Source of the DNA: Ophelia neglecta | Lineage: Eukaryota | Direction: 5' to 3' | NCBI GenBank assembly: GCA_965285935.1 | Contig: OZ260661.1 | Coordinates: 17,670,001 to 17,734,000, forward strand | DNA: 64,000 nt | In this document: one piece after another, positions 39,136-59,856 of the stretch | How positions within the stretch are numbered: the stretch's first letter is position 1 | How the letters are laid out: each line of letters opens with the position of its first letter | Translations under genes and position numbers: made by a program | Notes under the pieces: generated by a model | What the model saw: the letters and a program-made list of their open reading frames with translations, nothing else | Told to the model about the DNA's origin: nothing | The model's database searches: none

Positions 39136-40807
39136 GGAAGTTTTATATTATTGTGTTTTAGTATACGTTTCTATTGTCACAAGTCAAGATTCTTTTGGGG
39201 AAGGTGGAAGGCAACTGTCTACTACAACATTATCAATAATGTTCTAGAAGATTATTGATAATGTTCAGCAGACGGTTGTCTAGTCACTGTCTGGCTTGAC
39301 CGTCTGGCACAATCTGTGACTACCTGAATGCATACCTGTGAATATGTATAGCACAGGTCCCGATGGTGCTGTGCTACACAGTATATGGTTTTTCACCTGG
39401 TCTTACAGTTCTGCCTATTAGAAAGAGACAATGATTGCCAATAAATAGTAAGATATGATAGTCATATAATACAAATATTTATTTTGCTTGATATTAACAA
39501 GAAATGGATAGGCCCATTAATCTCATTTGAAATGTGTTGATTAAATTCATGGCCAGGGCCCCGCCTGTTTGAAGCAGGACCATATCAAGCATACCTAGCC
39601 TTACTTGTGGACACAGGTTCACTGCATAATTAATTTTGTACATCAAATCACTAGGCCTGTATATCAGTCCATTTATTGCCAGACGAGTGTCCAGCGAATG
39701 ACCACCTAGGGGTGGAGCAGACAGTGTCTGCAGCACAGTCTAGGATTTTGGTCACATTTGCCAACTGTCTGGTTTATAATTATTCCAACAAAATCTATTT
39801 AAACGTTTATACTAAGTGAGACAGTGTTCTCGGCTCCAGGGTCATTCCTAATAAAGTGCTCCAAGGCTGCGACCTGTCGCACTTTATTATGAATAATATC
39901 TCTCACTTAATGAGTTACTGCACTCATATATCATGAGTATCAGTTCATGTTTTGACTTACATTTGAAAAAGATATGATTTTTTAATTATGTGGCATAAAA
40001 GAATAGGGAATATTCACTTATGCAACTTTGTGCCGCATTACACTGTCCCACTGATAAGGAAACGTTCAGTGTACTCGCGTAGCTCGATCAGCTGTTTCTG
40101 TCAACAATGAAGGGGGCAGCTGCACTAAGCATCACTGACTAAGCTTTACTAGCCTGAGTTCCCAGCGTAAACAAACATCATTTTACGTAAATCTGGGGCT
40201 GAGGAAAATTGTGTGATATTTCCATATTATTCTATATAGTATGATTATCATATGACTGTATTTAAATTAACGCAATCAGTCGTGTTTTGAGTAGTTATTC
40301 AACATTGTTTGACAGTACCTACCGAGAGAGGAGGAGAGTTCTCTGGCACATTAATGCGCATGCACATATTACCCGAAATACAGAATTGTCTGCTAGGCGT
40401 TTCAAAGGAGCAAGTACGTTTAAATGCCAATTCAGAGACAATTTGAGTTTTGTTTAGAGAAGTAAACAGGTGGACGTTAGAAGCGTTTTCTTCACTACAT
40501 GAGGAGGTAACCCTTGTAGGTTTATTCACGTCATATTTAGATAGTACGCCTAAGAAATAATTCACAAATTGTGAGGCACACGGCACAAAAATACTATTTT
40601 TTAAAGAGTTCTGCTGGGATTTCCCATCAATCCCAATGTAAACTGATTGCGTAGTTTTAAGGCATATAATCGATCTCTCATAAACATTTAATATTGAAAT
40701 GGGATAGTTTAATGTATTTTCACAGTTTATTGATATTCAAGGCATGTAATCGTATACTACTCACAAATACTGTATGTAGACAGGTGTGTTTCAGGTATAT
40801 AACATTA

Positions 40808-43800
40808 TGGCCAGTCACAGTGATCATGTCCAGTTGATGTGCAGATTTTGTGGCAGCAAAAATAAAGAAGAAAAACAAACTTTTACAGTGGCAAAGCATA
40901 AAGGGGTTTTGAAAAAAGTGTATTCCATTGATCTAGAAAAGGACCTTTATCCAGATATCCATCCAAATCGTTGCTTTAAGACATGTGACACTAGTCTGAG
41001 GAGGCTTAAAGAAAATTTGTTGAAAAGAAGGGCTGTGGATGCAAAGCATGAGGTGTTTGATTTTAAGGAACATGATTCTGAAAATTGTCCCGTATGTGGA
41101 ATCCCCAAACAAGGAAGCATAGGGGTAGCTTGTGCTTCTTCTGTTGAAGTGCAAAATATGGAAGAGACTAGTCTGTCAATGGAAGATATGCCATCAACCA
41201 GCCATGGTGAACCTGGGGTATCCCGCAAAAATAAATCTATTGCCAGAAAAAGTTTAACCTTTGAAGATCAACCTGAAGAACATACCACTAGAACCGTGTT
41301 TGGTGAAATTGAAATAACCAGTTTTGCTGTCGAAAGGTTCCAAGCACAGAAAATTGCCGAGTTATTTTCCTGTGGCATATGTAAGGGATTTCCTTCATTA
41401 CCCACATCTACACCTTGCGGAAATATTTTTTGTCTGACTTGTATGCAGGCTTGGCAAGGTGGAGCAAACACATGCCCGATGTGTAGGGAAGCCCTTGCTG
41501 AAGGCATAATGGAAAACCTGATACGAGATACGAAGGAAATACGAGATACACAGATACGAAAAATTAAGATTGAGTTAGATTATGACAGGGTTAGGGGTAG
41601 GGTTAAGCTATCAACCTAACTAAATCATAACTTACTTAACCCTTCAAACTAACCCTAACCTAGTCCATATGGCTACGTTTTAAACACCTCGCATCTCGTA
41701 TCTGCGTCTCGTATCTGGTATTTCGTATCAGCTTTTCCAGTATGCCCTTGCTGAAAGTGATCTCACAGACTTGAAAGGACATATTTCACAGTTGTATGAT
41801 TGCTTGACACTTGTGTGTGTTAATGAAGAGGTAGGTAGTCGGTTCACTGGCAGCATCAACCAAATGATTGAACATGAAAAATCATGCAAAGTCAGTGTGG
41901 CCAAAAGAAGTAGAGGATGTGGTTTCAACAAAAAAAGTTTGAAAGACTCTAAGATTACATATGTCAATACATTTAGAATGAAGCCTTGTTTGGAGACAGC
42001 AATCCCTATTATAGACACCTTTTGTGCAGACAACAAAGAAGACAAATATGATGTTATGTTTTACCTCCTGATCAATCATTTAAACCAGGTAAGGCAGTAT
42101 GTAGTCAACAATTTCATCTCCTATTTTTATAGGCTAGGGCAATAAAATGAATTAGTTATTGCCTGAACTTCCTGACTAATTTGGTGATAATTACAATTTA
42201 TAAAAAATCTCGTATATAATGGCAGATGAAACATGTTAATAATGACACCTTCACGTTTAGGAGAGACATGAAAAGTATAGAGGTACGAAAGGTTCGGATG
42301 GGAAGCATGCAGAGTAGCCAGCTAACTACCGAAGAATGTTTAGCCATGAGAGTGGACACCCTTCAGTCCAAAAAAAAACAATACAAAAACCAATATGTTT
42401 TTTGAGAAGTTTTGAAAGGTGTGTTTCAGGTTAATTAAAATAAAACATTGTAATTTATTAGAAAATACTACCAGCTATTCAGCCATGACTTTACAATATT
42501 AATTTCATGTTAATTTGTGGCATGATTCTAACAGTTATATCAGTTTAGTACTGTAGTGTGGGATAACAAACCAGTTTAATTTCTTTTTGCAGTCTCAAGT
42601 ACACAAACCCCTTGCTTAGTCCATATGCAGTTAGCCGAGCTGAATTAGGGTTCATGCCTGCCACTGCCCGTTTTGCTGTGGAGTCGGGTGACGAAGAACT
42701 GGCTTACTATCATACTCCAATCAAACCTCCCAAAAGTGGTACTTCCTTCTCATCTACAGTTGGCATGGGTGCTGATCCAATAAATATTATAGATGACTTC
42801 TTAGTGAGCATCCCCGAAGTACATTCTCTCAACATGGCTGGAGTGAGATGGAGTTATATTGAAGCTCTTGCAAGGACTTTAGAAGAACTGGATTCTGATG
42901 TTGAGTGCAATGTTTGGCCATAGGGTTGTCATCTACGAATAAACTATTTCTAGTTACTGTTAAAGATGGTGCTGATGGCCTTGGTGACATTTCTGTATAT
43001 AAGCAGGTTGGAGATAGGACCCTTCCAGACAAAGCTTTTCGAGCTTCATTCTGTGTTTTGAAGATTGAGATTTTGTTGGACAAAGGTGAAAAAAAATCGG
43101 TCTTTGTAGAGGAAAAGCCTAATTCTATACGCACAAACCGCCCCTATTTACAGGCTGTAGCTAATGAGAATGATAAGGCCTCTTCTGTCACATGTCTTGT
43201 ACCTATGGAGGCTGAAAGGCAATACCTACAGGACAAAGTTCTTAAGGTTGAAGGAGAGAATGGCTGGAAAATGTACAAAGTAGACTTCTACAATTCTATG
43301 ACAGATGAGAAGCTAGATAGGAAGGAGGGTGGATTGGCAGGCAGTGGGTCTGATTACTTGTGCACACTGTGTTATGCAACAAGAGAAAGTGCCAAACAAA
43401 AACTTGGAACATTTTCGATTACCACAAAAGAGGAAACCACAAAAATAGCCCAGTACCTGGAAGAGAACCCAGACAATCTTAGTCAAAAAGAACTTGACAA
43501 TGTTGCTAAGGGAGTTAAAGCAATTCCAATACTGACCAGTGATCCGACTAAACACAACACATGCAGATATTAACAATGGCAGGTTTCTGAAAAATCTAAT
43601 TTGTCGTGAAATAGCCGGAGTTAATAGCTGGAACTTAAGCCAGGACATAAAACCCCTCGTAGATGAAGCTGAGAGAAAATTTGATAGACATTTAAAAGCA
43701 GTGGTTGGTATGAACTCTGCCCTAATGATGCCTGGCAATTATGCTAGAGAAATGTTCAAGGAAGAAAATGAGGCTCATTTATTGCATTTTGTGCCATCCG

Positions 43801-44268
43801 AGCGCAAGACCTTGCCATCTGAATTAATTGCCCAATACAGGTTGATGAGAAAAGTGTACAGAGCTAACCATCCCCTGACAGAGTTTCCAGATTTAGTGCA
43901 GGACTATAAAGACATTTCTGTAAAATTTGGCACTATTTTGCTAGAGTCATTTAGCTATGCCCAATGGCCTAACTACATTCACAAGGTTATTGAACATGCC
44001 CAAGAACTCATTGTAGAAGGCCCTGGAAAAGTAGGTGGGTTGTCAGGAGAAGGAATAGAGGGTGGCAACAAAGTGTTCAGACACTCGCAAGTTGTTGTCT
44101 AGGAAAGGTTGTGTAGAGGATAGCCTGCGTGATGTTTTGGTTTTGCATTGGTTAAACAGCAGCCCTAAATTGTACAAAATATCAAATGTGGCTCATGAAC
44201 AAAAAAGATGTGGAAAATGCTTTGCTTTAGGACACAATTCACATGTGCTAGATGACATTTATACTTAA
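40808..44268 (+). pseudogene. RAG1L: RAG1-like recombinase/transposase, full domain set, disrupted by a MITE and several frameshifts; two probable introns (42089-42260, 42419-42592)
   Basis: CND: CRFCG...DIHPNRCFKTC...HDSENCPVC. RING: CGICKG...TPCGNIFCLTC...CPMC. EECLAMRVDTLQS matches RAG1 AVCLAIRVNTFLS. Core: VKDGADGLGD (D600), EEKPNS, TDEKLDRKEGGLAGSGSDYLCTLC (D708), NYIHKVIEH...GEGIEGGNKVFR (E962), DVLVLHWL. Tail: CGKCFALGHN. Confidence 0.96.
41503..41746. mobile_element. MITE family A inserted in RAG1L just after the RING
   Basis: TSD CTTGCTGAA at 41494-41502 and 41747-41755. Precise removal fuses ORF 40786 with ORF 41771 in frame (REALAE-SDLTDLKGH). Confidence 0.95.
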
Positions 44269-45333
44269 AATTATTACCTCCCGGTGTGTATTTAGGGTGT
44301 TATATTGATAAATGGTTATTTCTTAAAAAGTGTGAAGTCAAAGCAGTGCAATGCATATTGAAAAGTACCATGTTAGCTAGTTGTATGACTAAAGCAAAAT
44401 ATAACAAGTGAAAGATCTATTCTGGTGAATATATAAACTTTGATACCTTTATTACAGCACAATACATGTCATATTGACATCGTGAAGGCTTCAGAGTTCT
44501 TATAAGCTCCCAAGCTTACAAGGAACAAGCCTGTTATGTAAGACTACTTAAAAATATGACAATAAAATGAACAATGTAAAGTCACAATTGGCAATTATTT
44601 ATGTTTAGGTACCGTCGCTGTAAAATCTAGTTATATAGTTAAATTGGGTGCCATCTACTTTCTGCAGCAGCTGTTATTTCAACGGGAACATCCCTATATT
44701 CCGAAGGTCCATATGTCAGTATTTATTTGATTTTTTTAATGGCCTCTAGGCCTCCATTAGTAAAACAGTAAAACATTGTAAGGTTGTACTGTCTTCATTG
44801 ATGTTTTCTTTATCTAAATTTGTTCCAAAAGTGAATTGCTTGCGTGTCAAAATTGGAGTGTTGAAAATTGAGCTTGGCGATATAAATCAAGTATAGTTTG
44901 TAAACATACAGGTAGTATCTGAAATTCTTTCTGTTAGTCTCATAATAAGGCCAGCCTCTCCGGGTTAGCCTAATTTAACTAAATGTCATAACCCCACTTT
45001 AATACAATGATAAAAAGATATCAAGCATGTATTCCTATATGTGCAGTCACCAGATGAAGGGGCCCTACATTATCCCCACGTGAGCTTGTTCCATATACCT
45101 GGAAAAGCACGGCGACGGTGGGTATAGTGATAAGCAGGCAACACCCTGTAGTATGCGGTACAACGCGTAAATTTATCTCATTTACCTATAATTTGGTGGA
45201 TGTATATATACGAGTCTGACATAACGCTTTAACATGGAAATGGCCGGAAAAAAAAGATGTCGACGAAGGGCAAACGGAGAACAACATCTTGAGTTCCCTG
45301 ATCAATTTTCGTTGGGAAAACTGAGAGGTAACT

Positions 45334-45472
45334 GGCATACTGGAAAACCTGATACGAAATACGAAGGAAATACGAGATACACAGATACGAAAAATTAAGA
45401 TTGAGTTGGATTATGACAGGGTAAGGGCTGCGTCTCGTATCTGGTATTTCGTATCAGCTTTTCCAGTATGCC
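45334..45472. mobile_element. MITE family A, internally deleted copy
   Basis: TSD GAGGTAACT at 45325-45333 and 45473-45481. Confidence 0.92.
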
Positions 45473-45699
45473 GAGGTAACTTTAGATTAATAAAGCTTTA
45501 ACAAAATATAGTTTGATTATCGATTATTGATCTTAATTTTTCTTTACATGATACGTTGGTAGCGGTATTGCATTTTTATGTGTAATGCTGTAAATTATGT
45601 ATGTTGATAAAGGTTTTAATTGGGTCTATACAAATCACATATTGGATTCCTAGAAAATTGAGTTAGTAGGGTGTTGGAAACACAAACCATATATATGTA

Positions 45700-45942
45700 G
45701 GCATACTGGAAAACCTGATACGAAATACGAAGGAAAAACGAGATACACAGATACGAAAAATTAAGATTGAGTTGGGTTATGACGGGGTTAGGGGTAGGGT
45801 TAAGCTAGCAACCTAACTAAACCATAACTTACTTTATCCTTCACCCTAACCCTAACCTAGTCCATATGGCTACGTTTTAAACACCTCGTATCTCGTATCT
45901 GCGTCTCGTATCTGGTATTCGTATCAGCTTTTCCAGTATGCC
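45700..45942. mobile_element. MITE family A
   Basis: TSD ATATATGTA at 45691-45699 and 45943-45951. Confidence 0.93.
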
Positions 45943-46633
45943 ATATATGTAGGGTTATAAAGGTAAGGTAAGGTAAGGTTTATTATAACAATAGGCATGA
46001 CAGCCTGTGTGTTACATTTATACAATTTACAAGTAATAATGAGGAATATGCGAGGCGGAGCACAACAACACCCAAATCACCAGGCATATGCATTTCTGAT
46101 TTTAGTAGCCTTCTTTATAAATATGGCTAAGTTATTCAATGTTTTTACATTTTCCACATTAAGTTCTATGTGTCAGTGACAAAACAAGATAGAGAACCAT
46201 TGGGCTACACTGCCAATTTACTTAGGCTTAAAGCAAGATTTACCTTGGGCTGCAAAATAGCCCAGGCAAACGATACATAATATATGAAAATAATTATTAA
46301 GTAACATCAAGCAAAAAATACTAATCATGGGTGGGAGGGAGGGAATTTCACTCAGCCTCCGGCGAGTGCAAACCTGATGTGGACGGCCTTGAACTTAATA
46401 CTGCCAATATCCCAATTCGTCCCACTGGCAACTCGTCACAATCACTTAACCTCAATTAAGTATATATACTATAATTGTCATTTAAGTTCTATGTGTCAGT
46501 GACAAAACAAGATAGAGAACCATTGGGCTACACTGCCAATTTACTTAGGCTTAAAGCAAGATTTACCTTGGGCTGCAAAATAGCCCATAACAAAGCCCAA
46601 GGAAAAGGGGCAAACCATAATATACTAGAATAA

Positions 46634-47605
46634 TTAATGATGGGAACAGACACGGTGTGCCATACTGGCCAAGGATTCCTCCGGTGCCCGAATATAACGC
46701 TGATAAGCCGAACTTGACCAGCGTCCAAGAAGTTTTACTTCCCAATCGCTGAGGCCGGCCGCTGCCGCCGACGTAGCGCTACCCGAGCGAAACGAGTGCC
46801 CACTAAACAAGTCTGGTTGGTAACCTGCCAGAGCCAAATATAACCTTGTGTCCTTCACAAAGGATTCTTTGGAGAGTGCATGTCCATGGTGGAGTAGTAG
46901 GGGCCCTTGAGGATTCCAGCTGCCTGCTGAATGCCTGTAGTCAATGTAACTTAGCATGGCACAGTGTCCACACTCCACGGTACCGGTACATCCTATAATT
47001 ATACGACACCCTTTGTTAAGAGTATCCGATTTGCTTCGACTGAGAAACACAGACATAAAAGGTGGTCCTTTCTTTGTCGTATGGAAGTTCACATCCTGAG
47101 CACAAAGATGAAGGTCGGGTGAAAATGATTTACCCACAGCCACAGTGAGTTCACCTGCACGAAGACATCCAAAAAAGGCCAGCGACATGGCGGGCCACAA
47201 GCAGTTTCCTGACGAGGCTGGCGGAATTAACGGCATAAGTTTACATAGGATATCAAATGTTATTGGCAGTTTCTGCTTTGTAGGGGTCCCAGCGATATCT
47301 AGAGCCCTCAGAGACTTAGCAACACGCACTGAATTCTCCAAAGGGTTGGCATATCCATTTTCTACATGATATGACCGTATTGCGGCGAGGTAGACCCGAA
47401 TTGACCCTGTACGCAAGTTTTGCAGGCTAAGGAAGGAAATAAATCTCAGCAGTGTAGGCTCACTGGCTGGAAGCTTGTCTAAGTTCTACTGGTCACAGAA
47501 ATCCACGAATCGCTTCACCCCAGAAGCATAAGTGTGACGCGTATTAGGTCTCACGCTCTCCCTGATCAAAGTGGCTGCTTGACTGTCAATGGCCTCCAAG
47601 GGCAT
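46634..47605 (-). pseudogene. Tyrosine recombinase of the Ngaro element, with one in-frame stop at 47486-47488
   Basis: AFFGCLRAGE, SKSD, GHSFRSGSAT, LGRWSSSAYQRY. The frame extends upstream to ATG 47605 (MPLEAIDSQAATLIRESVRPNTRHTYASGVKRFVDFCDQ*). Confidence 0.9.
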
Positions 47606-47770
47606 GGCTGAAAAGAGGGACAAGTCACCTTTAATAAAATGCAGGATAGGTCAAGTGTAGAAGAAGAAAACGGCTAAAAGCCCACGCACAAGAGAAGTGC
47701 AACACGTAATTACAGGCGGCATTGCCAGACGCCCAACAGGGCATAGACGTACAGTTAACAAGGTAATCGC

Positions 47771-49585
47771 TCAAATGTTTACTGAGCAGCTGAAATCTCT
47801 AATGTCATTAGGTCTAGAATCCGCCCCTGGGGCCAAGCTATGGAAAAGCGTGATATTCTGTCGGCTGAGGGAATCTGCCAAGACGTTGTCCTGGGTAGGA
47901 ATGTAAATTGCTGTTATTTCAAAGTCACCTTGCGCTGCTACCAGAAAAAGAGCTCTCACCAAGTCCATGATAAGTGAATCTTTACAAGTGCCTGAAGATA
48001 ACACCTGTACAATGCATTGGTTGTCACAGTGGAGGATTATGCGCATTCCCCTCCACAGGTGTCCCCATGCCCTAGCTGCTAGTAGGATGGCATAAAGTTC
48101 TCTCCAGTTGATGCTGCGTTCTCTGAGGGACGCATGTTTGTCTGTGAACGGCATAACATACCACATGTTTCCGAAAACCCCAGCGACTGCCTTGTCACTA
48201 GCGTCTGTGTATAAGTGCAAAGCAGAACTGGAGGTCCAATCCGCTTCATTCATCATGGCTACCCCATTCCAGGATGGTAAGTATCTGAGCCACCAAGCGA
48301 GATCCTTCTTGAACTCCACATTTAGTCTCACTCTGTAGTGTAAATATTTGGCACGGCTGGAGAGACTGATCATACGACGGACAAAGGTTCTCCCCGGGCG
48401 GACCACCCTCGCGACAAACATGAGCTTTCCTACTAAAGACAGGAGTTCGCGTTTCCGGCATGACCTCCTCTCTGTCCAACCAGATAGCTCATTAATGACG
48501 TCTGCAAGTCTTTGTGGTGAAATCCTTAGTTCCATCAGAATTGTGTCCAATATGATACCAAGGAACTCCATGACAGGGGAAGGAGCACATACCTTTGTAG
48601 GGTTCACAGTTAGACACAATTTATCACACACTGAGGTCATGGTGTCGAGGTTACTTTGACACTCCTCCGTGTCTGCCGTACCAGCCGTTACATAATCATC
48701 CAGATAGTGGTCAACAAATGTTACTCCCTGGTACCACATGATGAGCTTTGCAGCATGAGCGATGTCTGTAAATAGTTTCGGGCTGCTACGTAAACCAAAT
48801 TGTAACACGACGTCATAGTAATACTGACGAACCCAGCTGCCAGAAAGAGGGTCAATCATATCGAGAGAATAACCCAGCAGTTCCCAGTCTTCCTTTCTTA
48901 CTGGGACATGCTTGAAGGCGTCAGCCAAGTCCAGTTTGGCAAGGAGGGTACCCTTGCCTCTAGCTACTATATGCCGAACTACGTCGTCCAAAGACAAATA
49001 AGACACGTGAAAGTCTTCTGGGTCAATATGGTCATTTACTGAATCTCCAGGCGGCCATGAAAGGTCGTGAATGACTCGGACTTTATTAGAATTTCTTTTA
49101 CGAAATGCCCCCATAGGTGAACTCACAAAGTTTTCAAATGGTGGGGTGGAGAAGGGGCCAATGGTGGTTCCATAGCACATATCTTTTTGAATGCAATCCT
49201 TAACTTCTTCGAAATATTCCTCCACCGAAGGCCAATTTTTGTGCACTCTAAGTTGTCTGTCTCCCTTGTAGCCAATGTCTACTCCGCTTGCCAGTGCCGT
49301 GTCTATCCGAGAGACAAACTCCCTATCGGGATGGGGACGGAGCCCCTCCAGGAAAGCCTCCCTGTTGAGGTTACGTGGTTTGACAGGGGCACTTGAATTG
49401 AGGTTGGGGTCCGTAGCAGTGCCAACAAACATGCCCTCTGCGGCACTGATCGCCGTTTTGACATCGGCCTCTGTTGAAGTTGAAACACACTTCCTGTGGT
49501 GCCCGCTGATGACTCTCACCTCGTCGGAAGCGTGGTTGTGGAGACGGGGCTGCTGGAAAGGGACATTCTGTGACCAGGTGGTCAC
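47771..49585 (-). CDS. Ngaro reverse transcriptase / RNase H
   Basis: RVIHDLS, KLDLADAFKHVP, FGLRSSPKLF, HYLDDY, YTDAS, INWRELYAI, HCDNQ, NVLADSLSR. Confidence 0.95.
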   Translation of the reverse strand: MTTWSQNVPFQQPRLHNHASDEVRVISGHHRKCVSTSTEADVKTAISAAEGMFVGTATDPNLNSSAPVKPRNLNREAFLEGLRPHPDREFVSRIDTALASGVDIGYKGDRQLRVHKNWPSVEEYFEEVKDCIQKDMCYGTTIGPFSTPPFENFVSSPMGAFRKRNSNKVRVIHDLSWPPGDSVNDHIDPEDFHVSYLSLDDVVRHIVARGKGTLLAKLDLADAFKHVPVRKEDWELLGYSLDMIDPLSGSWVRQYYYDVVLQFGLRSSPKLFTDIAHAAKLIMWYQGVTFVDHYLDDYVTAGTADTEECQSNLDTMTSVCDKLCLTVNPTKVCAPSPVMEFLGIILDTILMELRISPQRLADVINELSGWTERRSCRKRELLSLVGKLMFVARVVRPGRTFVRRMISLSSRAKYLHYRVRLNVEFKKDLAWWLRYLPSWNGVAMMNEADWTSSSALHLYTDASDKAVAGVFGNMWYVMPFTDKHASLRERSINWRELYAILLAARAWGHLWRGMRIILHCDNQCIVQVLSSGTCKDSLIMDLVRALFLVAAQGDFEITAIYIPTQDNVLADSLSRQNITLFHSLAPGADSRPNDIRDFSCSVNI

Positions 49586-49609
49586 AGGCTTTGCAACGGT
49601 GACAGCGCA

Positions 49610-50354
49610 TTAAGGTCGGTTTTAGAGCAGAAGAGTCAAATAATAGTGTCTGAAGTTCTAGGTCAGGTTGTCCAAATAGTAAGCTCTCCCTTTTGCTGAG
49701 TTGCATGCGAAATTGTTGGTCATATGCCAGCACTGTGGGCCAAATGTACCTTTTGTCCCATTCCTGTATTCTGCGCCTGTAGGCCAAACATTGTATGTAG
49801 ATTCCTGGGTCTGACAACACCAAAACTTCTTCATAGGCGTTCCACGCCTGCATCCAAGTGAGAAAATTAGGTACAATTTTACCTTCCTTTCCGCCCTGCT
49901 TACCACCGTGTTGCATTCCCAATTGCGTGGACTCCAGAACTTCTAATAAATTGATGAACTCACCTCTCCTGGCCCTGTCCTTCCAAGAGTGAGGTGGTGC
50001 GGGCGATATTACTGGGGCCGACATTACTGGAGCCGACATTACTGGGGCCGGCGGGCTCGCACTAACTGGCTTTGGCAGAATTTCCGGATAGTCTGGCGAA
50101 ATCGTTTCTAGTTTCTTCATCCTTTCCCCCATATCCTGCAGGCCCACTGTTAGACTGCTCACCTGCTGCAGAATCTCGTGCATCATGCCAATCACTGATT
50201 CCGTAGGGTCAGCTCCTCGGGGTGACGCTCCCGGTTTCCCGCCGCCAGCACTTTTAGGTCTAACATCCGCGTCGCTGGCCGGTCCCATCTGGCATAGCTC
50301 TCCTAAAGGTTTAGGATGGCCTTTCGAGTCCCTACCGCACCTACTGCACTTCAT
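49610..50354 (-). CDS. Ngaro gag-like ORF with CCHC/CCCH fingers
   Basis: CSRCG...H...C, FLTWMQAWNAYEE, LAYDQQFR, CHRCKACDH and a C-terminal CFNFNRGRC...C...HVCWHC motif; overlaps or abuts the RT ORF. Boundaries approximate. Confidence 0.8.
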
Positions 50355-53300
50355 AATCGCCCCTGTCCGACTCTGACAGATCAAATTACGAGCTAGACAG
50401 GACCATTTCACTCAGCCTCCGGCGAGTGCAAACCTGTGGACGGCCTTGAACTTAATACTGCCAATATCCCAATTCGTCCCACTGGCAACTCGTCACAATC
50501 ACTTAACCTCAATTAAGTATATATACTATAATTGTCATTTAAATAATTCAATGAACTTTTGTATACTAGGACGAACCACATAATATCGCGATATATACTT
50601 TGCCCTGATTTCAAAGTACAGACAACATTCTACAATAAAATGATACTCGTCCTCTAACACGTTACATACTAAACATTTTCTCTCATTAAAACTAACTGGT
50701 GGTTTCTTCCAGCTTCCAGATTCAACAAGGAGATCGTGATTTCGGGTTCTAAATCTGCTTAAGACAAATATGTTTCTGTATGACACTTTTGACATATAAA
50801 ATGGTAAACAAATAGGCTTACATATTTCGGTATACAGATTTCCCTTACTAGACCCTTCAAAACCAGAAGACCAGTTTTGTTTATAAGAGTCCAACATCCG
50901 TTGCTTAAAAAGCACTAAACATTGTTTTATATGTCCCACCCCTTGATTTTCCCAGACGAAACCAAACCCATACACAAAGAGCAAGTTTTTCACATTGGTT
51001 GCCCATGTGTCACCACGTGTGTGATCTTTCATAATCATATATATTTTAGAAGACAATTTCTGAATATTTCCGTTAACAAGTGAGAACCAAAATTTCATTA
51101 TTATAAGATTTCGTGTTATAAAAACAGGGTGTCGACCAAGTTCACCATACACAAATTCGTTTTTTGTTGAAGACTTTAAGTGAAGAATCTTTTTACAGAA
51201 CCCAAGATGAACTTTCTCAACGTCTGGGGCTTTATGAAACCCCCAAACTTCAGCTGCATAATGCAAAATTGGCAGGACCAATTTATCAAACAGGTCACAT
51301 AAGTGGTCTGGCCTTAAATCTAACCTATAAGTATACTTAAGTAAACTGAACATTGCCTTTTTTTCTTGATAAGCCAAAGTTTTTTGTGCAAAAGTCCAAG
51401 TACCACTCGCAGAAAATAAAACACCCAAATAGCTTAACTGACCAACAACCTCCAAAGGAATACCTTTATAAATCCAATGATCAGCAGTTGACAAGCGCCC
51501 ACCCTTCCTAAAAACAATTATTTTAGTTTTTATCTGTATTGAGAACTAATTTCCACTGATCACAATAATTTTCTAAATGATTCAAACTATTTTGTAACCC
51601 CCTCGAACTATCAGCCAACAAGGATGCATCATCATCATAAAGAAGAATAAAAAGCTGCAACATTTCTATAGATACGCCAGAAACGCCATTAGCATTTAAG
51701 GTTTCCTCTAAATCGTTAACATACATTGCAAATAGGAATGGGCTTAGGCTTTCACCTTGCCTTACACCAAGGAGACATTCAAAAGTATTTGACATTTGGC
51801 CGTTATAATCACGCACTCTTGATTTAACTACTGAATACATACTTTTGAGGATTTTAAGAATATTTCCTGTGACACCTAACTTTATCAATTTATACCACAG
51901 TCCATCCCGATTTATAAAATCAAATGCTTTACGAAAGTCAATAAAAGCGCAATACAACTTTTGTTTCCCATTTAGAAAGTGTGAAATCAATGCATTTAGA
52001 GTAAAAATAATGTCTACTATACTAAAACCTCTTCTGAATCCAGACTGTCCCTCAATATAAATAGCATATTTTTCTGCCCAAGTATTTAATCTAGTGTCTA
52101 GTATTTTTGTGAAGAGTTTCCCCAGGGTGCTCAACAATGTGATACCTCTATATAATTTTGTACAGACTGTCCCTCAATATAAATAGCATATTTTTCTGCC
52201 CAAGTATTTAATCTAGTGTCTAGTATTTTTGTGAAGAGTTTCCCCAGGGTGCTCAACAATGTGATACCTCTATAATTTTGTACATTATGCACGTTGCCTT
52301 TCTTATGAACTGGAACAACAATACCTTCTGTCCACTGTTCTGGAAAATAACCACTTCTAAAAACAGCATTGAACAGTTGTACTAAATATGGAACCATGAT
52401 GTTGGAACCATATTTGAACAGTTCATTTATAAGTAAGTCTGGACCACTAGACTTGCCATTTTTTAGCTTTTTAAGTACATACAATATCTCCGCATCACCT
52501 ATAGGAAAATTAAGTTCTTGAAACATTTCATTTATATGATGGGTGAAATGATCATCAACAAAATCTGAAATCTCACGCTCTATTTCAAAATCCTCAATTT
52601 TTTCTGGATTACTAACATCTCGGAAAAAGTCATACAACTGATTTATAAATATGTCTGGATTTGATTCCTCCGCGGGTGGTTTAAGTAATTTCCAATATTA
52701 TTTTGGGTTGTCATCTTTGGCTTGTGTAATCAACTTAACTCCGTTTTTATTATATATTTTCTTACACAGATCTGAATGTTTAGAATATTCATTACGAGCA
52801 TCAACCATTGCTGTCCTACTTCCATCGGTCATATTTTGTCTCATAATATTAAGCTTATTCCTAAACTGCTCTTTAAGATTAATACATACATCACACATCC
52901 ATAGAACACAATTATTACAACATTTCTGATTTCCTCTACCTCGACCAGTCACAAAGGTTTTTCCAAAATAAGGCATTGCACAACCCATCAGCGTGTTTGT
53001 GAAACATTGTACCATTATTTATACCATCTTGATTATGTACATTTTCAACACCCAAAAGTGCCTTGGAGAATTTACCAGTGATCTCCGCTTGTCTCAGGGC
53101 CTCAAAATATTGCCCTAATTTGTCTTCATTCCATAACAATTTAGTAGAAATTTTTTCATCAACTTTCAGACGTGAATTTTTCATTTCACAATGCAGCTCG
53201 AATTTTAAAGTACAGTGATCTGATAACACACCTGGGTCACATATACTGAAATTATTCATAAGTTCAAAGTCCTCACATTTACAAAGGACATAGTCAACCA

Positions 53301-53661
53301 CGCTGGCACCATTCGCTGTATAACAGGAAAAATTTCCAACATTTTTGTCACTGCCAAGCCTCCCATTTACAATACGTAAACTTGTGCCAATACATAAATC
53401 TAACAATTGAGAACCATATTCATTTGTAGACTTGTCTTTGGACCGACGCACCAGATTTACATCCACAACATAATCATCCGGTAATGGCAGGTAAAAACCA
53501 GTATCATTCCTGACATAATCTGGTAATTCGGCTGTACGAGCATTAAAGTCTCCCATTATGAAATATGACTGTTGATTTGCATTTGTATTTTCGAATTCTG
53601 CAATATCAGATATCAATTTATAATAAGGACTGAAATTTAACTGCCTAGAGGATGATGCTGG

Positions 53662-53905
53662 GGCATACTGGAAAACCTGATACAAAATACGAAGGTAATA
53701 TGAGATACACAGATACGAAAAATTAAGATTGAGTTGGATTATGACAGGGTAAGGGGTAGGGTTAAGCTAGCAACCTAACTAAACCATAACTTACTTTATC
53801 CCTAACCCTAACCCTAACCTAGTCCATATGGCTACGTTTTAAACACCTCGTATCTCGTATCTGCGTCTCGTATCTGGTATTTCGTATCAGCTTTTCCAGT
53901 ATGCC
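53662..53905. mobile_element. MITE family A
   Basis: TSD TGATGCTGG at 53653-53661 and 53906-53914. Confidence 0.93.
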
Positions 53906-53934
53906 TGATGCTGGTGGTATGTAGACCAAACAGA

Positions 53935-54179
53935 GGCATACTGGAAAACCTGATACAAAATACCAGATACGAGACACAGATACGAGATGCGAGGTGTTTA
54001 AAACGTAGCCATATAGACAAGGTTAGGGTTAGGGTGAAGGGTTAAGTAGGGAATGATTTAGTTAGGTTCATAGCTTAACCCTGCCCCTAACCCTGCAATA
54101 TCCCAACTCTATCTTATTTTCTCCGTATCTGTGTATCTCGTATTTCCCTCGTGTCTCGTATCAGGTTTTCCAGGATGCC
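53935..54179. mobile_element. MITE family A (variant subfamily)
   Basis: TSD CCAAACAGA at 53926-53934 and 54180-54188. Confidence 0.93.
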
Positions 54180-54603
54180 CCAAACAGATATATACATTCT
54201 TTGCAAAATTAAAATAATCTTTACTTAATTTAAACAAAACAAATACATCGTCACAATTTTTAACAACTTCAACTCCATCTACTACTGACTGCCTAATATA
54301 TATAGCAATACCACCGGAATCTCTTCTTGCTCCAACTGTCCGCTTGCCGCGGTGAAAAGGTTAACAAATATAGCCAGGAAAACTCATTTCTTTCTCCTCT
54401 GATGACCATGTTTCTGTCAGTAATATAAAGTCACAGTCATCTACAGTTTTATTAAATACGCTATTTTCTAACTTTGAATATTTCTTTGTCACTAGTCCTT
54501 GCACATTCCATAAACAAAAAGACAGTGTTGATTTATTTTTTCTAGAAGGTTCATATGCTTTGTCCGTTAATCTAATGTGCGTAGTTTGTGCCCCATGCCG
54601 ATC

Positions 54604-55425
54604 CTAGTAGAATTCATCATAATCAACATCGTCCATTTCGTCTGCAGATTCAACTTTGATCCATTTTTGTGGCATGTTTGGTTTCATTTTACACAGGATA
54701 GCACCATCCACTGTGTATGCAAATTCAACAGCAGACTGCTTCCTAACTGCATCCAACAATTTCTTTCTTGGAGTTGTCAGGTCTTCAACTATAACCAGTT
54801 TGTCACCATATATAGGATTTCTCTTGATTGCTTCCTGGTCAATATTAGCCTTTTTTTTCTTCATGATCTCATGCTTTATGCCTCTTCTCACAAATTTAAC
54901 AATCACACCCCTAGGCTTTCCACTCCGTGGTTTCTTTTCTCCAACGCGATGGAGGACAGATATATCATTTTTGTCTACTGTTGTTCCTGTCTCCCCAATA
55001 GCTGTCATGACCGTCACACCAAGAGTTTCTTCAGTTTCATTTTGATCCTCCAGGATTCCAAAGATACGTATGCTATCTCTTCTAGAATATTGTTCATGTT
55101 TATCACCTTGCATGAGATGCAGATTTTTCTCTCGCTTTAGTTCTTCCAGGAGTGGGTTACTTGCAGCCTCTTTTGCGAGTTCCATGACATCAACCCTATC
55201 CGACAGTGCCTTGATACTTACTGCATATTCCTCTATCTTGGTTTCCAGATTTACTCTCATCTTTTCGCATTTCTCATCCATCTTTTTGATTAGATCTTTT
55301 TTTAAGTCACCCATCTCAGTTTTAATTATATCTTGTTGTTCTAAAACACTATCCAACTTATCATTCATCCCTTTCAAAATCTCCATAACATTTGATGACG
55401 ATGCTTCTGAGAAATCCATCTCCAA
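54604..55425 (-). CDS. LINE ORF1 (coiled coil plus RRM-like/transposase_22-like region)
   Basis: EQYSRRDSIRIFGI, DISVLHRVG...PRGVIVKF and VEDLTTPRKKLL. Confidence 0.85.
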   Translation of the reverse strand: MEMDFSEASSSNVMEILKGMNDKLDSVLEQQDIIKTEMGDLKKDLIKKMDEKCEKMRVNLETKIEEYAVSIKALSDRVDVMELAKEAASNPLLEELKREKNLHLMQGDKHEQYSRRDSIRIFGILEDQNETEETLGVTVMTAIGETGTTVDKNDISVLHRVGEKKPRSGKPRGVIVKFVRRGIKHEIMKKKKANIDQEAIKRNPIYGDKLVIVEDLTTPRKKLLDAVRKQSAVEFAYTVDGAILCKMKPNMPQKWIKVESADEMDDVDYDEFY

Positions 55426-57150
55426 GAAAGGTTACTTAAATGCTGGTCTACTTAAACTGTCTGAGGGTGAACTTTCAAATCTCCTTCTTATACCAGTCAC
55501 TGATCCCTGTGCGGGGGTTTCATTCCCTTTGTCAGACATTGTTTACACCAAGTCACTGGCAGCATACAGTGTACAAAACTATACATATACTGTTCCCTGA
55601 ACAAAGTGTCACAATGGGCTAGTATATACACACAAAGCTCAGTCAGCTGTAACACTGACTGACCAGTCTATCAGATATAGCACTGCCCAAAATCTGATTC
55701 ACTATTTTCTAAAAGAATTACAAACTTTCTATATAAGCCAGTCCTATAATCTGAATCACCACGCATTCACACACGGTCTATACACTTTCTAAAGTCAACT
55801 AAAGCAGTACTTTTACAGAAAAAGAACATTAAACTCAAGCAACCAGAGTGTTGCCATACTCCACCACACACACCATCACATTTCTATAAATTTCTATAAA
55901 CTACCATTATTTACACATATATATGGTTCAAACCAACAATGCAACTAATGGAACAAAGCATGTAAAATGGATTTGATAATGGGCGTATTGCAGCAATCTT
56001 TCTTGAAATAGGGGCAACAATTTAAATTATTTTCAGTTGATAATTAGTTGGCCTTCATAAGGTAATCATAGTACATGAAGACCTTTATCGGGAATTATAT
56101 TTTGAAAATAGACTATTAGCCTAGAGTGCATTTCACACGGGTCATGACCCCAAATTGGGCAATTTAAGTAAGTTAAAAAATAAAGTAACAGCCGAAATTA
56201 TACGCATAATTGACATGACGCAATAAAAGCCAGGAGACCCATGGTTCTTTTCTACACGTAATGCGATTATGGCAATATTTAATAGCTTCGCGTCAATAAT
56301 GAACAAAGTCGACTGTCGGAAATTCTGTTAAAATATTTTCCTAAAACAGAGGGAGAGGCAAAAAAGCCCATGTTGGTGTGATGGCCCGTGACAAACGGTC
56401 TTTAACCTTAACAACTTTTTAAAAAAAAGTATTCGCAATAAAGGTTTCATGCATTCTGTCTACCTTTAGAGAGTCAACTAAATACAAACTGGTCTAAAAT
56501 GCTGCCCCTATTTCATTTATGAAAACAAGGTAGACTATTTCCTTTAAGACTAGCGTTATACTAGCTCTGTATAGGAGCTATATTTCTGGAGTCAAACATA
56601 GTCCCTTTTTATGCTTATATCTATTTCAGTATAACATAGAAATAAACGGTCTACCTTCGGGAAAGGATATTTTTACGGATTTTGGAGTTGAGTAACTAAA
56701 ACTGAGAGAAAGCCAGTGGGGGAAAGAAGACGCTCCTAGAACCGAGAATAATAAATAATTCAATGTGATTATCAAGTAATAATGTTACAAGTTTTCATTC
56801 ACGGATTACGGGAAACAAAATAAGCCAATTTTAGTTCTACACAAGGAAACACCATCCCTTACCTATAGTTAACATGATTAATAGGCATAGGGTGACCATG
56901 AACTATATATACTAATGCTCTTTTTTTCTATAACAGAAAAAAAGGTGAGTCTCACTTGAAATGCACGGAGACCTCACGGTATGCGCCTACGTATATTCTA
57001 TTATATGCATACTATAATCTTCCTCAATTTCAGCCTAGAATAACTAAACAACAACCGTTAACCCCATACTTGCAACATTCGCCTTCATGACCTCACACAG
57101 TTCTGCTGTCACGGCCAACTGGTCGAAGCGCAAAATCATGGCCAAATTAA

Positions 57151-57395
57151 GGCATACTGGAAAAGCTGATACGAAATACCAGATACGAGACGCAGATACG
57201 AGATACGAGGTGTTTAAAACGTAGCCATATGGACTAGGTTAGGGTTAGGGTGAAGGGTTAAGTAAGATATGATTTAGTTAGGTTGCTAGCTTAACCCTAC
57301 CCCTAACCCTGTCATAACCCAACTCTATCTTATTTTTTTCGTATCTGTGTATCTCGTATTTCCTTCGTATTTCGTATCAGGTTTTCCAGTATGCC
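57151..57395. mobile_element. MITE family A
   Basis: TSD CCAAATTAA at 57142-57150 and 57396-57404. Confidence 0.93.
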
Positions 57396-57700
57396 CCAAA
57401 TTAAGGTAGCTCTGCTCATCAGCTTGCTTTGCTTTTTTTGCTTAATTGAGTAGTGCGTGTTTTTAGAAAATTCCGACGCACTATTTATGGACTAAAAATG
57501 CATTATTTTGTACAAAGGAATTTTCGGACTAACGGACCTTCGGACTAACGGACCTTCAGACTAACGGACCTTCGGAACATAGGCATGTAACCATTTCAAC
57601 ATAATGAATCCATAGCTCCTAAAGTGAAAAATGGTAGGACAATAAAAAGACTGACATGCACTGCTAGCCTAACATATATGTACATGTATGTACTGAACAT

Positions 57701-58464
57701 TCACTTGTGCGTGCTTTTCCCTCTACCCTTTTCCTTACCTATTTTTAAAGTACAAGGTGAACAATAAAATTTGCCTCTGGGAACACGCTTAATGCCAGCA
57801 CAAAACTGGGGTAACCACAGCTTACACCCATCACACTGAATCCAAGGAATGGGTGATACCACATCAGAATCAGTTATTTTACACATATCACCCAAGTCAC
57901 ATGGAGAAGGAGCCATTCTCTGGGCATACTGGAAAAGCTGATAACGAAATACCAGATACGAGACGCAGATACGAGATACGAGGTGTTTAAAACGTAGCCA
58001 TATGGACTAAGTTAGGGTTAGGGTGAAGGATAAAGTAAGTTATGGTTTAGTTAGGTTGCTAGCTTAACCCTACCCCTTACCCTGTCATAATCCAACTCAA
58101 TCTTAATTTTTCGTATCTGTGTATCTCGTATTTCCTTCGTATTTCGTATCGGGTTTTCCAGTATTCTTTTGTTTTCTTTTGTCTGTATTTAAAAAGACAG
58201 ACTCAACAGAGCCTCCTGCAATAACTAGTGAATTTTCAATCTCAAAGCTTGAATGACCCCTTGTATTGAAATCTGACAGAGCATAAGATGCCTTGTACAT
58301 GTCACACTGGTTTTCGGCCATATTTATTACAAACAATGTGGAACTACCAGACAATACACTCCTGTGGTAGGGATGTCCGGTAGCTTCTGCTGGATACCAC
58401 CATACACAAAAAAACAGTTGTTGATAACAGACAAACAAAAGTTGGATAGATATACATTATCTGA
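57701..58464 (-). pseudogene. RAG2L: RAG2-like 3' portion: last two kelch-type blades plus PHD finger, split by a MITE and truncated at the 5' end
   Basis: YLSNFCLSVINNCFFVYGGIQQK (alternative frame, 58464-58381), then RGHSSFEIENSLVIAGGSVESVFLNTDKR, then after MITE removal MAPSPCDLGDMCKI...PWIQCDGCKLWLPQFCAGIKRVPRGKFYCSPC. Convergent with RAG1L. Confidence 0.85.
57923..58164. mobile_element. MITE family A inserted in RAG2L between the last kelch blade and the PHD
   Basis: GGCATACTGGAAAAG...TTTTCCAGTAT. The right tip is eroded and the TSD is degenerate (ATTCTCTG / ATTCTTTTG). Confidence 0.9.
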
Positions 58465-58666
58465 GGCTATTGATTAAACGCGGATGTGCGGAGGCTATGC
58501 GGAGGCGGAGGTCATGAGTATTTCTGAGTGGCATGAAGCAAATAATCGTCAGCAAGGACAGGGTTAGGACGGAGGGTTAGTGACAGGTTTGATAGGTCTA
58601 GTGCTCTGTTCTAATTTCTGGATTCACCTCCGCAAGGCTCCGCGCCTCCGCTTTTAATCAAAAGCC
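58465..58666. mobile_element. MITE family B with discordant flanks
   Basis: Reverse-complement homolog of 14636-14861. Flanks ATTATCTGA and CTCTTTTCG do not match. Confidence 0.88.
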
Positions 58667-59611: not shown

Positions 59612-59856
59612 GGCATACTGGAAAACCTGATACGAAATACCAGATACGAGACACAGATACGAGATACGAGGTGTTTAAAACGTAGCCATATGGACTAGGT
59701 TAGGGTCAGGGTGAAGGGTTAAGGATTGAATGTTCCAGCTAGGTTGCTAGCTTAACCCTACCCCTAACCCTGTCATAACCCAACTCTATCTTATTTTCTC
59801 CGTATCTGTGTATCTCGTATTTCCCTCGTGTCTCGTATCAGGTTTTCCAGTATGCC
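59612..59856. mobile_element. MITE family A (variant subfamily)
   Basis: TSD GGGTACGTT at 59603-59611 and 59857-59865. Confidence 0.93.

What the first reader, a model, noticed from the sequence alone, without database searches (positions are those of the whole stretch)
57701..58464. RAG2L is invisible in the ORF track: three fragments join into kelch-kelch-PHD with no acidic hinge
Seen: blade signatures FFVYGG (58464-58381) and GHSSFEIENSLVIAGG, then SVFLNTDKR running directly into MAPSPCDLGDMC...WIQCDGCKLWL(P)QFC...YCSPC once the MITE is removed. The linker is only about 10 residues and not acidic. Established: the acidic hinge of jawed-vertebrate RAG2 suppresses transposition, and amphioxus RAG2L lacks the PHD. 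Inference: this is a transposition-type RAG2L that keeps a PHD. The Pro at the expected zinc-binding His is probably a decay mutation.
Basis: partly seen in the sequence, partly recalled or inferred. Interest (0 to 1): 0.85.

Follow-up and report, generated by a model that had tools for sequence, protein, structure and literature searches.

The report
Truncated RAG2-like pseudogene fragment, ordinary architecture
The stretch is the broken tail end (last two propeller blades plus a PHD zinc finger) of a RAG2-like transposase-partner gene, and its direct blade-to-PHD junction with no acidic hinge is the published norm for invertebrate RAG-like transposons.

Summary
Three minus-strand fragments (58464-58369, 58360-58175, 57916-57701) align in order to a RAG2L profile. 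They cover the blade-5 GG strand, blade 6 and the PHD (hhalign E 4e-7, 2e-13, 8e-30). That profile hits amphioxus RAG2L (PDB 6b40, E 6e-41) and vertebrate RAG2.

The interrupting element is a high-copy MITE. A sister copy 13 kb downstream has no MITE, reads straight from blade 6 into the PHD, and carries His where the window has Pro. All other genomic copies checked also have His.

The linker is short and non-acidic: 17 residues from the blade-6 GG to the first PHD Cys, 2 of them acidic.

None of this is unusual. Martin et al. 2020 state that all invertebrate RAG2L except amphioxus keep a PHD and lack the acidic linker. In my own scan, 45 of 50 distinct database relatives carrying the PHD pattern have exactly the same 17-residue spacing.

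The window copy is also only the 3' ~45% of the gene. It is cut off at 58464 next to a second MITE, frameshifted by a 4-bp deletion, and probably one arm of a local duplication. It is a decayed fragment of a known kind, of low interest. The scan had already noted the RAG1L-RAG2L pair on this same window.

The parts
58369..58464 (-). RAG2L fragment 1: blade 5, including the FFVYGG second strand. Homology to other RAG2L copies begins exactly at 58464.
   Evidence: hhalign to profile A2, E 4.4e-7; tblastn to L022 aa 192-225; 95% DNA identity to copy B
58364..58366 (-). Site of a 4-bp deletion relative to copy B. It shifts the frame between fragments 1 and 2.
   Evidence: A/B alignment. One read-derived contig carries the 4 bases.
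58175..58360 (-). RAG2L fragment 2: end of blade 5, blade 6 (GHSS... strand A, LVIAGG strand B, 5-aa B6-C6 loop, strand C) and the start of the linker (..TDKR).
   Evidence: hhalign E 1.9e-13; tblastn to L022 aa 230-290; strands mapped on the AF2 model of L022
57920..58173 (.). 254-bp insertion relative to copy B. It is a ~242-bp MITE (core 57922-58164) of a high-copy family with a 9-bp TSD, and its left end is degenerate.
57701..57916 (-). RAG2L fragment 3: rest of the linker (MAPSP), the PHD finger, a Gly/Lys/Arg-rich tail and the stop codon (57703-57701).
   Evidence: hhalign E 7.9e-30; Pfam PHD E 2.8e-4, below cut-off because the His is lost, against 3.6e-6 (27.3 bits, above cut-off) in copy B
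57809..57811 (-). CCC (Pro) at the zinc-ligand His position. Copy B has CAC, and all other genomic RAG2L copies examined have His.
   Evidence: Contigs of two runs read CAC here.
58465..58666 (.). Second MITE (32-nt TIRs, a different family). It abuts the point where RAG2L homology ends.
40786..44268 (+). Decayed RAG1L, convergent partner: RING finger, RAG1 core in several frames, CCGHC-type tail that has lost its last Cys.
   Evidence: Pfam RAG1 E 7.7e-30 and 7.6e-19; C-terminal frame
44684..57592 (.). 12.9-kb nested transposon insertion in the RAG1L-RAG2L spacer. It is absent from copy B. Without it the spacer is about 520 bp.
   Evidence: Copy B joins the equivalents of 44656-44683 and 57593 onward directly.
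44318..44683 (.). Spacer downstream of RAG1L, duplicated at 97% identity 19.7 kb further on. This is the left end of the duplicated segment.

Best explanation
Window 57701-58464 (minus strand) is the 3' ~45% of a RAG2-like (RAG2L) pseudogene. It belongs to a decayed RAG-like transposon of the common invertebrate, hinge-less, RAGL-B-like kind. It encodes the second half of kelch blade 5, blade 6, an 8-residue connector and a C-terminal PHD finger, and it sits tail-to-tail with a decayed RAG1L at 40786-44268.

In intact relatives the propeller is the RAG1L-binding cofactor of the transposase. The PHD is presumed to read methylated histone H3; this is inferred from the sea-urchin protein and was not tested here. 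On the RAG2 side, two features are reported to restrain transposition in jawed vertebrates: the acidic hinge and the long B6-C6 loop. Both are absent here, as in other RAGL-B proteins.

This copy cannot work. It lacks blades 1-4, has a 4-bp frameshift, is split by a 254-bp MITE insertion, and has lost one zinc ligand (His to Pro).

It is most likely one arm of a local duplication of [RAG1L-RAG2L spacer + RAG2L 3' end]. The other arm lies 13 kb downstream, outside the window. That arm keeps blades 2-6 and the His, but has its own stop codon, frameshift and MITE.

Shown: the identity, the architecture, the lesions and the existence of the sister copy. Inferred: the tandem-duplication history (about 60%) and the biochemical roles.
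For: RAG1L is confirmed by Pfam. The three fragments align colinearly to a RAG2L profile. That profile hits PDB 6b40 chain M 'RAG2L' at E 5.7e-41 and vertebrate RAG2 at 1.5e-10. A language-model search puts the intact paralogue next to vertebrate RAG2 clusters at score 0.95.

Copy B aligns at 44% identity (E 2e-31) across the blade-6/PHD junction, without a gap there, to a paralogue whose upstream ORF passes the Pfam RAG2 cut-off. The two database homologues looked up both sit convergent to RAG1-domain genes in other assemblies.

The AF2 model of the closest intact paralogue has pLDDT 87.8. Its last propeller strand ends at residue 287 and the first PHD Cys is residue 296. Foldseek finds kelch propellers, including RAG2.

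The PHD of copy B fits the published invertebrate pattern Cx4-7 C x14-16 C x2-4 C x4 H x2 C x11-18 C x2 C exactly: Cx5, x15, x2, x4, x2, x12, x2. The GG-to-Cys spacing is 17 residues in 45 of 50 distinct database relatives that carry the PHD pattern, and in the genomic copies aligned across the junction, with 0-4 acidic residues.

The lesions and the empty MITE site come from the A/B alignment. No other RAG2L homology exists in the window or in the 30 kb downstream.
Against: Pfam RAG2 (PF03089) and RAG2_PHD (PF13341) do not hit the window fragments or copy B directly. Membership therefore rests on the family profile and on synteny.

Foldseek ranks other kelch propellers (LZTR1, KLHDC2) above RAG2, so fold alone is not specific.

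One read-derived contig runs on past 58464 into sequence unlike the window. Contigs also show His and an undeleted frame in the sample. So the truncation point and two of the lesions may be haplotype-specific, or the contigs may be mosaics of copies A and B.

TIRs and the TSD of the RAG-like element were not looked for. Assignment to family B rather than another hinge-less lineage was not tested by phylogeny.
Confidence: 0.88

Rival explanations
1. Copies A and B are not paralogues. They are two haplotypes of one locus that the assembler placed in tandem (a false duplication). On this reading the window fragment is simply the 3' end of a single full-length RAG2L pseudogene.
For: The duplicated blocks are 95-97% identical, in the same orientation and complementary: A keeps RAG1L and B keeps the RAG2L 5' part. 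Both junctions lie at or near repeats. One contig leaves the window sequence at 58464.
Against: Contigs about 99% identical to copy A that include the A-specific MITE junction coexist with the reference form in one sample. If the sample is one diploid animal, A already has its own two alleles and B is a separate locus. The assembly has no gap (no N) between the copies.
Confidence: 0.12
2. The fragments are a chance or unrelated kelch + PHD arrangement, for example a piece of a host kelch gene next to the PHD tail of another transposase, and not RAG2L.
For: Pfam names only generic PHD and kelch families for these pieces. Foldseek top hits are LZTR1 and KLHDC2.
Against: The family profile hits RAG2L 6b40 at E 5.7e-41, about 29 orders of magnitude better than any non-RAG2 kelch protein. 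The junction is conserved in register in dozens of relatives. The RAG1L neighbour is convergent here and in both other assemblies looked up.
Confidence: 0.02
3. The fragment is still used: an expressed, domesticated short kelch-PHD protein or exon.
For: Some contigs in the sample lack the frameshift and keep His. The stop codon and basic tail are conserved with copy B.
Against: There is no start codon and there are no upstream blades. A MITE with stop codons splits the frame. Differences between A and B run 12 non-synonymous, including a stop in B, to 7 synonymous codons, as expected without constraint. No RNA run holds the stretch, which is weak evidence.
Confidence: 0.03

Closest known systems
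Invertebrate RAG2L of RAGL-B transposons (sea urchin SpRAG2L; mollusc and nemertean RAG2L; Martin et al. 2020, PMC7204232)
   Same: Kelch propeller followed directly by a PHD with the same Cys/His spacing pattern. No acidic linker. 5-aa B6-C6 loop. Convergent RAG1L with a RING finger and a CCGHC-type tail.
   Different: This copy is a 5'-truncated, MITE-split, frameshifted pseudogene that has lost one zinc ligand. Assignment to family B was not tested by phylogeny.
Amphioxus BbeRAG2L (ProtoRAG; PDB 6b40)
   Same: It is the best solved-structure match of the family profile (E 5.7e-41), aligned through blade 6 up to the GG..S strand.
   Different: BbeRAG2L ends after the propeller and has no PHD. 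The family here continues into a PHD after 8 residues.
Jawed-vertebrate RAG2
   Same: Homologous propeller (profile E 1.5e-10; feature search 0.95). A Trp two residues before the zinc-binding His is kept. I take it as the counterpart of mouse W453 from the motif position only; this was not tested.
   Different: RAG2 has a 52-62-aa hinge that is 39-44% acidic, a 10-aa B6-C6 loop and a different PHD ligand pattern. Here the GG-to-Cys stretch is 17 aa with 2 acidic residues, and Pfam RAG2_PHD does not match.
RAG2L-A of Ptychodera flava and brittle stars (Martin et al. 2023, bioRxiv 10.1101/2023.08.20.553239)
   Same: Invertebrate kelch + PHD partner of a RAG1L, in tail-to-tail arrangement.
   Different: RAG2L-A carries a 66-78-aa acidic hinge (34-40% D/E), and in P. 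flava a double PHD. Neither is present here.

Membership tests
RAG2L (RAG-like transposon partner, hinge-less RAGL-B type) | Six-bladed kelch propeller homologous to the RAG2 core | tested here: inconclusive
   The family profile hits RAG2L 6b40 at E 5.7e-41 and the window pieces align to that profile. The window copy holds only blades 5 (part) and 6. Copy B holds blades 2-6.
RAG2L (RAG-like transposon partner, hinge-less RAGL-B type) | C-terminal PHD with the invertebrate ligand pattern Cx4-7Cx14-16Cx2-4Cx4Hx2Cx11-18Cx2C | tested here: met
   The spacing fits exactly in copy B and in the window. In the window's reference haplotype the His ligand itself is Pro.
RAG2L (RAG-like transposon partner, hinge-less RAGL-B type) | Convergent (tail-to-tail) RAG1L gene a few hundred bp away | tested here: met
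   RAG1L lies at 40786-44268 (+). The spacer is about 520 bp once the 12.9-kb insertion is discounted, against 409 bp in the paralogue at L023.
RAG2L (RAG-like transposon partner, hinge-less RAGL-B type) | No acidic hinge between propeller and PHD; short (5-aa) B6-C6 loop | tested here: met
   17 residues from GG to the first Cys, 2 of them acidic. The model gives 8 residues between the last strand and the Cys, and the loop G-S-V-E-S.
RAG2L (RAG-like transposon partner, hinge-less RAGL-B type) | Element bounded by RAG-like TIRs with a 5-bp TSD | not tested
   This is outside the finding's span. The 5' end of RAG2L lies beyond the window.
RAG2L (RAG-like transposon partner, hinge-less RAGL-B type) | Phylogenetic placement of the RAG1L core and RAG2L blades 2-5 within RAGL-B | not tested
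Jawed-vertebrate RAG2 / invertebrate RAG2L-A | Acidic hinge of 50-80 residues (34-44% D/E) between kelch and PHD | tested here: not met
   the junction is 17 residues and 12% acidic.
Jawed-vertebrate RAG2 / invertebrate RAG2L-A | Vertebrate-type PHD (Pfam PF13341 RAG2_PHD) | tested here: not met
   No PF13341 hit at E up to 1 for the window, copy B or the intact paralogues.

The most novel reading that the evidence does not exclude
The junction between propeller and PHD in hinge-less RAG2L is not a loose linker but a fixed-length, conserved connector: 17 residues from the blade-6 GG to the first Cys in 45 of 50 distinct relatives carrying the PHD pattern, with a recurring [FY]T.K...P..C motif. 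If so, the PHD would be held in one geometry against blade 6. The acidic hinge of RAG2 and RAG2L-A would then have arisen as an insertion that freed a previously rigid module. That predicts a different way of coupling chromatin reading to cleavage in the transposases than in the recombinase.
Probability: 0.35. Interest if true: 0.35.

Novelty: new member of a known kind. Interest (0 to 1): 0.17.

Why it matters
It matters little beyond annotation. The locus adds one more decayed RAG-like transposon copy to a genome that holds at least 14 RAG2L loci, apparently of several subfamilies. It shows that a gene finder working on ORFs alone would miss this one. It therefore bears on no open question about RAG domestication. 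Two by-products may be of modest use. The kelch-to-PHD spacing is strikingly invariant across the family. The same genome also holds open RAG2L reading frames of 368 and 464 aa, which would be better material for biochemical work than this fragment.

Tried and rejected
- Pfam on the window pieces and on copy B gave only a weak generic PHD and no RAG2 family. I therefore built a family profile from intact paralogues instead.
- The word-indexed protein search returned only two unnamed homologues. Cluster look-up and contig look-up gave no names and no DNA, only neighbouring RAG1-domain genes.
- The organism could not be identified because run and organism names are coded. I cannot say whether this species' RAG-like elements are already published.
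- I looked for further RAG2L blades upstream of 58464, both in the window and in the 30 kb downstream, by blastn and tblastn. There are none apart from copy B.
- I tried to define the MITE's target-site duplication at this insertion. The family has a clean 9-bp TSD, but here the left end is degenerate and I left it unresolved.
- Read-derived contigs could not settle the 58464 junction or phase the lesions.
- I did not build or submit the stitched ~165-aa peptide or any read-through protein. Pieces were searched apart by reference, and intact paralogue ORFs stood in for the joined form.
- The AlphaFold-multimer run with a 'repaired' RAG1L was not attempted for the same reason, and because it would add nothing to a pseudogene fragment.

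Full report
WHAT IS IN THE SEQUENCE

- the FFVYGG strand, in frame 58473-58330;
- GHSS...AGG and the following strand, in frame 58456-58106;
- a 71-codon ORF, 57916-57701, with a Cys/His-rich motif and a Gly/Lys/Arg-rich tail.

On the plus strand, 40786-44102 holds a RING finger and pieces of the RAG1 recombinase core (Pfam RAG1 E 7.7e-30 and 7.6e-19). The last frame runs to about 44265 and carries a CCGHC-type tail that has lost its final Cys. So the two genes are convergent, as in RAG-like transposons.

THE INTERRUPTING ELEMENT

A search of the window's own genome with 57701-58470 shows that query positions 307-549 (window 58164-57922) recur at 98-99% identity. At least 40 copies were scored out of 1301 candidates. 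Aligned with their flanks, the copies start GGCATACTGG, end with the inverted sequence, and have clean 9-bp target-site duplications. It is a genuine MITE. At this site its left terminus is degenerate, and the insertion relative to the empty site is 254 bp (58173-57920).

THE SISTER COPY

The same search found a second copy 13 kb downstream, outside the window (G000:C1:17740710-17742117 = L018:6710-8117, minus strand). It is 95% identical and has no MITE. There, blade 6 runs into the PHD in one 143-codon open frame...YTDKR followed at once by MAPSPC.

Copy B has CAC (His) where the window has CCC (Pro, 57811-57809).

Copy B is itself broken:
- a TAG after the FFVYGGIQ strand, where the window has CAG;
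- a frameshift further upstream;
- another MITE in an earlier blade.

The window copy has a 4-bp deletion at about 58365 that separates fragments 1 and 2. Over 163 comparable codons the two copies differ by 12 non-synonymous changes (including the stop) and 7 synonymous ones, as expected for unconstrained decay.

THE WINDOW COPY IS ONLY A TAIL

Homology to copy B, and to every other RAG2L, starts at 58464. Position 58465 is the first base of a different high-copy MITE (58465-58666, 32-nt TIRs). Beyond it nothing resembles RAG2L, either in the window or in the next 30 kb, apart from copy B. The window copy covers residues 192-356 of a 368-residue paralogue, about 45%.

The block 44318-44683, which starts about 50 bp after the RAG1L stop, recurs at 97% identity just beyond the window's end. 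In copy B the equivalents of 44656-44683 and 57593 are adjacent.

Two things follow:
- 44684-57592 is a later 12.9-kb insertion, and the original RAG1L-RAG2L spacer was about 520 bp. The spacer is 409 bp in a paralogue.
- The segment [spacer + RAG2L 3' end] exists twice in the same orientation. The first arm is attached to RAG1L and the second to the RAG2L 5' part.

A tandem duplication of an internal segment of one element explains this most simply. I rate it at about 60%.

IS IT RAG2L?

Pfam does not say so for these pieces. The genome does hold paralogues that pass the Pfam RAG2 cut-off, and two of them have long open frames:
- L022, 368 aa, 61% identical to copy B;
- L029, 464 aa, 44% identical.

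Copy B aligns to one such paralogue at E 2e-31 across the blade-6/PHD junction.

A profile of the two open paralogues plus two database homologues hits the amphioxus RAG2L structure 6b40 at E 5.7e-41 and vertebrate RAG2 at 1.5e-10. Unrelated kelch proteins begin at 6e-12. The window's three fragments align to that profile in order.

Both database homologues sit convergent to genes with RAG1 domains in other assemblies. A language-model search puts L022 next to vertebrate RAG2 clusters (0.95).

An AlphaFold2 model of L022 with a 38-row alignment has mean pLDDT 87.8. It shows a kelch propeller whose last strand ends at residue 287, and a zinc-finger module starting at Cys 296. Foldseek returns kelch propellers, RAG2 among them.

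THE HINGE

- From the blade-6 GG to the first PHD Cys there are 17 residues in copy B. In the window there are also 17 once the insertion is discounted.
- Two of the 17 are acidic and two are basic.
- In the model, only 8 residues separate the last strand from the Cys.
- The B6-C6 loop is G-S-V-E-S, i.e. 5 residues.

I scanned the stored database proteins for the published invertebrate PHD pattern and measured the distance back to the last GG. Of 50 distinct relatives carrying the pattern, 45 give exactly 17, with 0-4 acidic residues. At least one exception (P0029) has merely lost the GG and still fits a 17-residue register. The genomic copies aligned across the junction keep the same register, and all 14 loci examined apart from the window copy have His at the ligand position.

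COMPARISON WITH WHAT IS KNOWN

Martin et al. 2020 (PMC7204232) make three relevant statements:
- invertebrate RAG2L lack the acidic linker;
- the PHD pattern is Cx4-7Cx14-16Cx2-4Cx4Hx2Cx11-18Cx2C, which copy B fits exactly.

Martin et al. 2023 (bioRxiv 10.1101/2023.08.20.553239) add the following:
- only the RAGL-A lineage has an acidic hinge, of 66-78 aa;
- RAG2L-B has a 5-aa B6-C6 loop, against 10 aa in mouse RAG2;
- CCGHC tails are near-universal in invertebrate RAG1L.

The window's gene therefore has the ordinary hinge-less, RAGL-B-like architecture.

READS

Contigs of three runs from one sample (coded; probably the assembled animal) were laid at 98% likeness or more. They show three things:
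- A contig only 2 letters from copy A reads CAC (His) at the Pro codon in two runs, while another run's contig has the reference CCC.
- One contig carries the 4 bases missing at 58364.
- One contig that includes the A-specific MITE junction leaves the window sequence at 58464.

Either these lesions are still polymorphic and the upstream structure differs between haplotypes, or the contigs are mosaics of copies A and B. Contigs cannot decide this (note 2). The existence of A-like variants at about 99% identity argues that B, at 95% and lacking the MITE, is a paralogue and not A's allele.

VERDICT

No stitched or read-through peptide was built or submitted. Pieces were searched apart by reference.

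Noticed in passing
L022 (G000:C2:83633776-83637186) and L023 (G000:C8:1113758-1117168): Two RAG1L-RAG2L loci on different chromosomes are 99.8% identical over at least 2.9 kb, right up to the ends of the fetched loci. The C2 copy has an open 368-aa RAG2L frame but a broken RAG1L. The C8 copy has a TGA at the kelch-PHD junction but a longer open RAG1L 3' frame. This suggests recent transposition or a recent segmental duplication.
   Followed up: partly
L029 (G000:C1:15624435-15627770), ORF 1462-2856 minus: An open 464-aa RAG2L of another subfamily passes the Pfam RAG2 cut-off, about 2 Mb from the window on the same chromosome. The genome holds at least 14 RAG2L loci, apparently of several subfamilies.
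   Followed up: partly
L034/L035 (G000:C8:1037354-1040912): Another RAG2L copy is split inside its PHD by the same MITE family that splits the window copy, at a different position.
   Followed up: no
window 58465-58666: A second high-copy MITE family (32-nt TIRs; 2333 first-look candidates, copies 79-91% identical) sits exactly where RAG2L homology ends.
   Followed up: partly
window 41503-41746 and 59612-59856: Further copies of the first MITE family lie in the window, including one inside the RAG1L N-terminal region after the RING finger. It produces the ...ENLIRDTKEIRDTQIRK... tail on the ORF at 40786-41619.
   Followed up: no
window 57810, 57824, 58218, 58305, 58364, 58418, 58426: Read-derived contigs of one sample differ from the assembly at these places. 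Among them are the His/Pro codon and the 4-bp indel, which points to allelic variants of the pseudogene or to mosaic contigs.
   Followed up: partly
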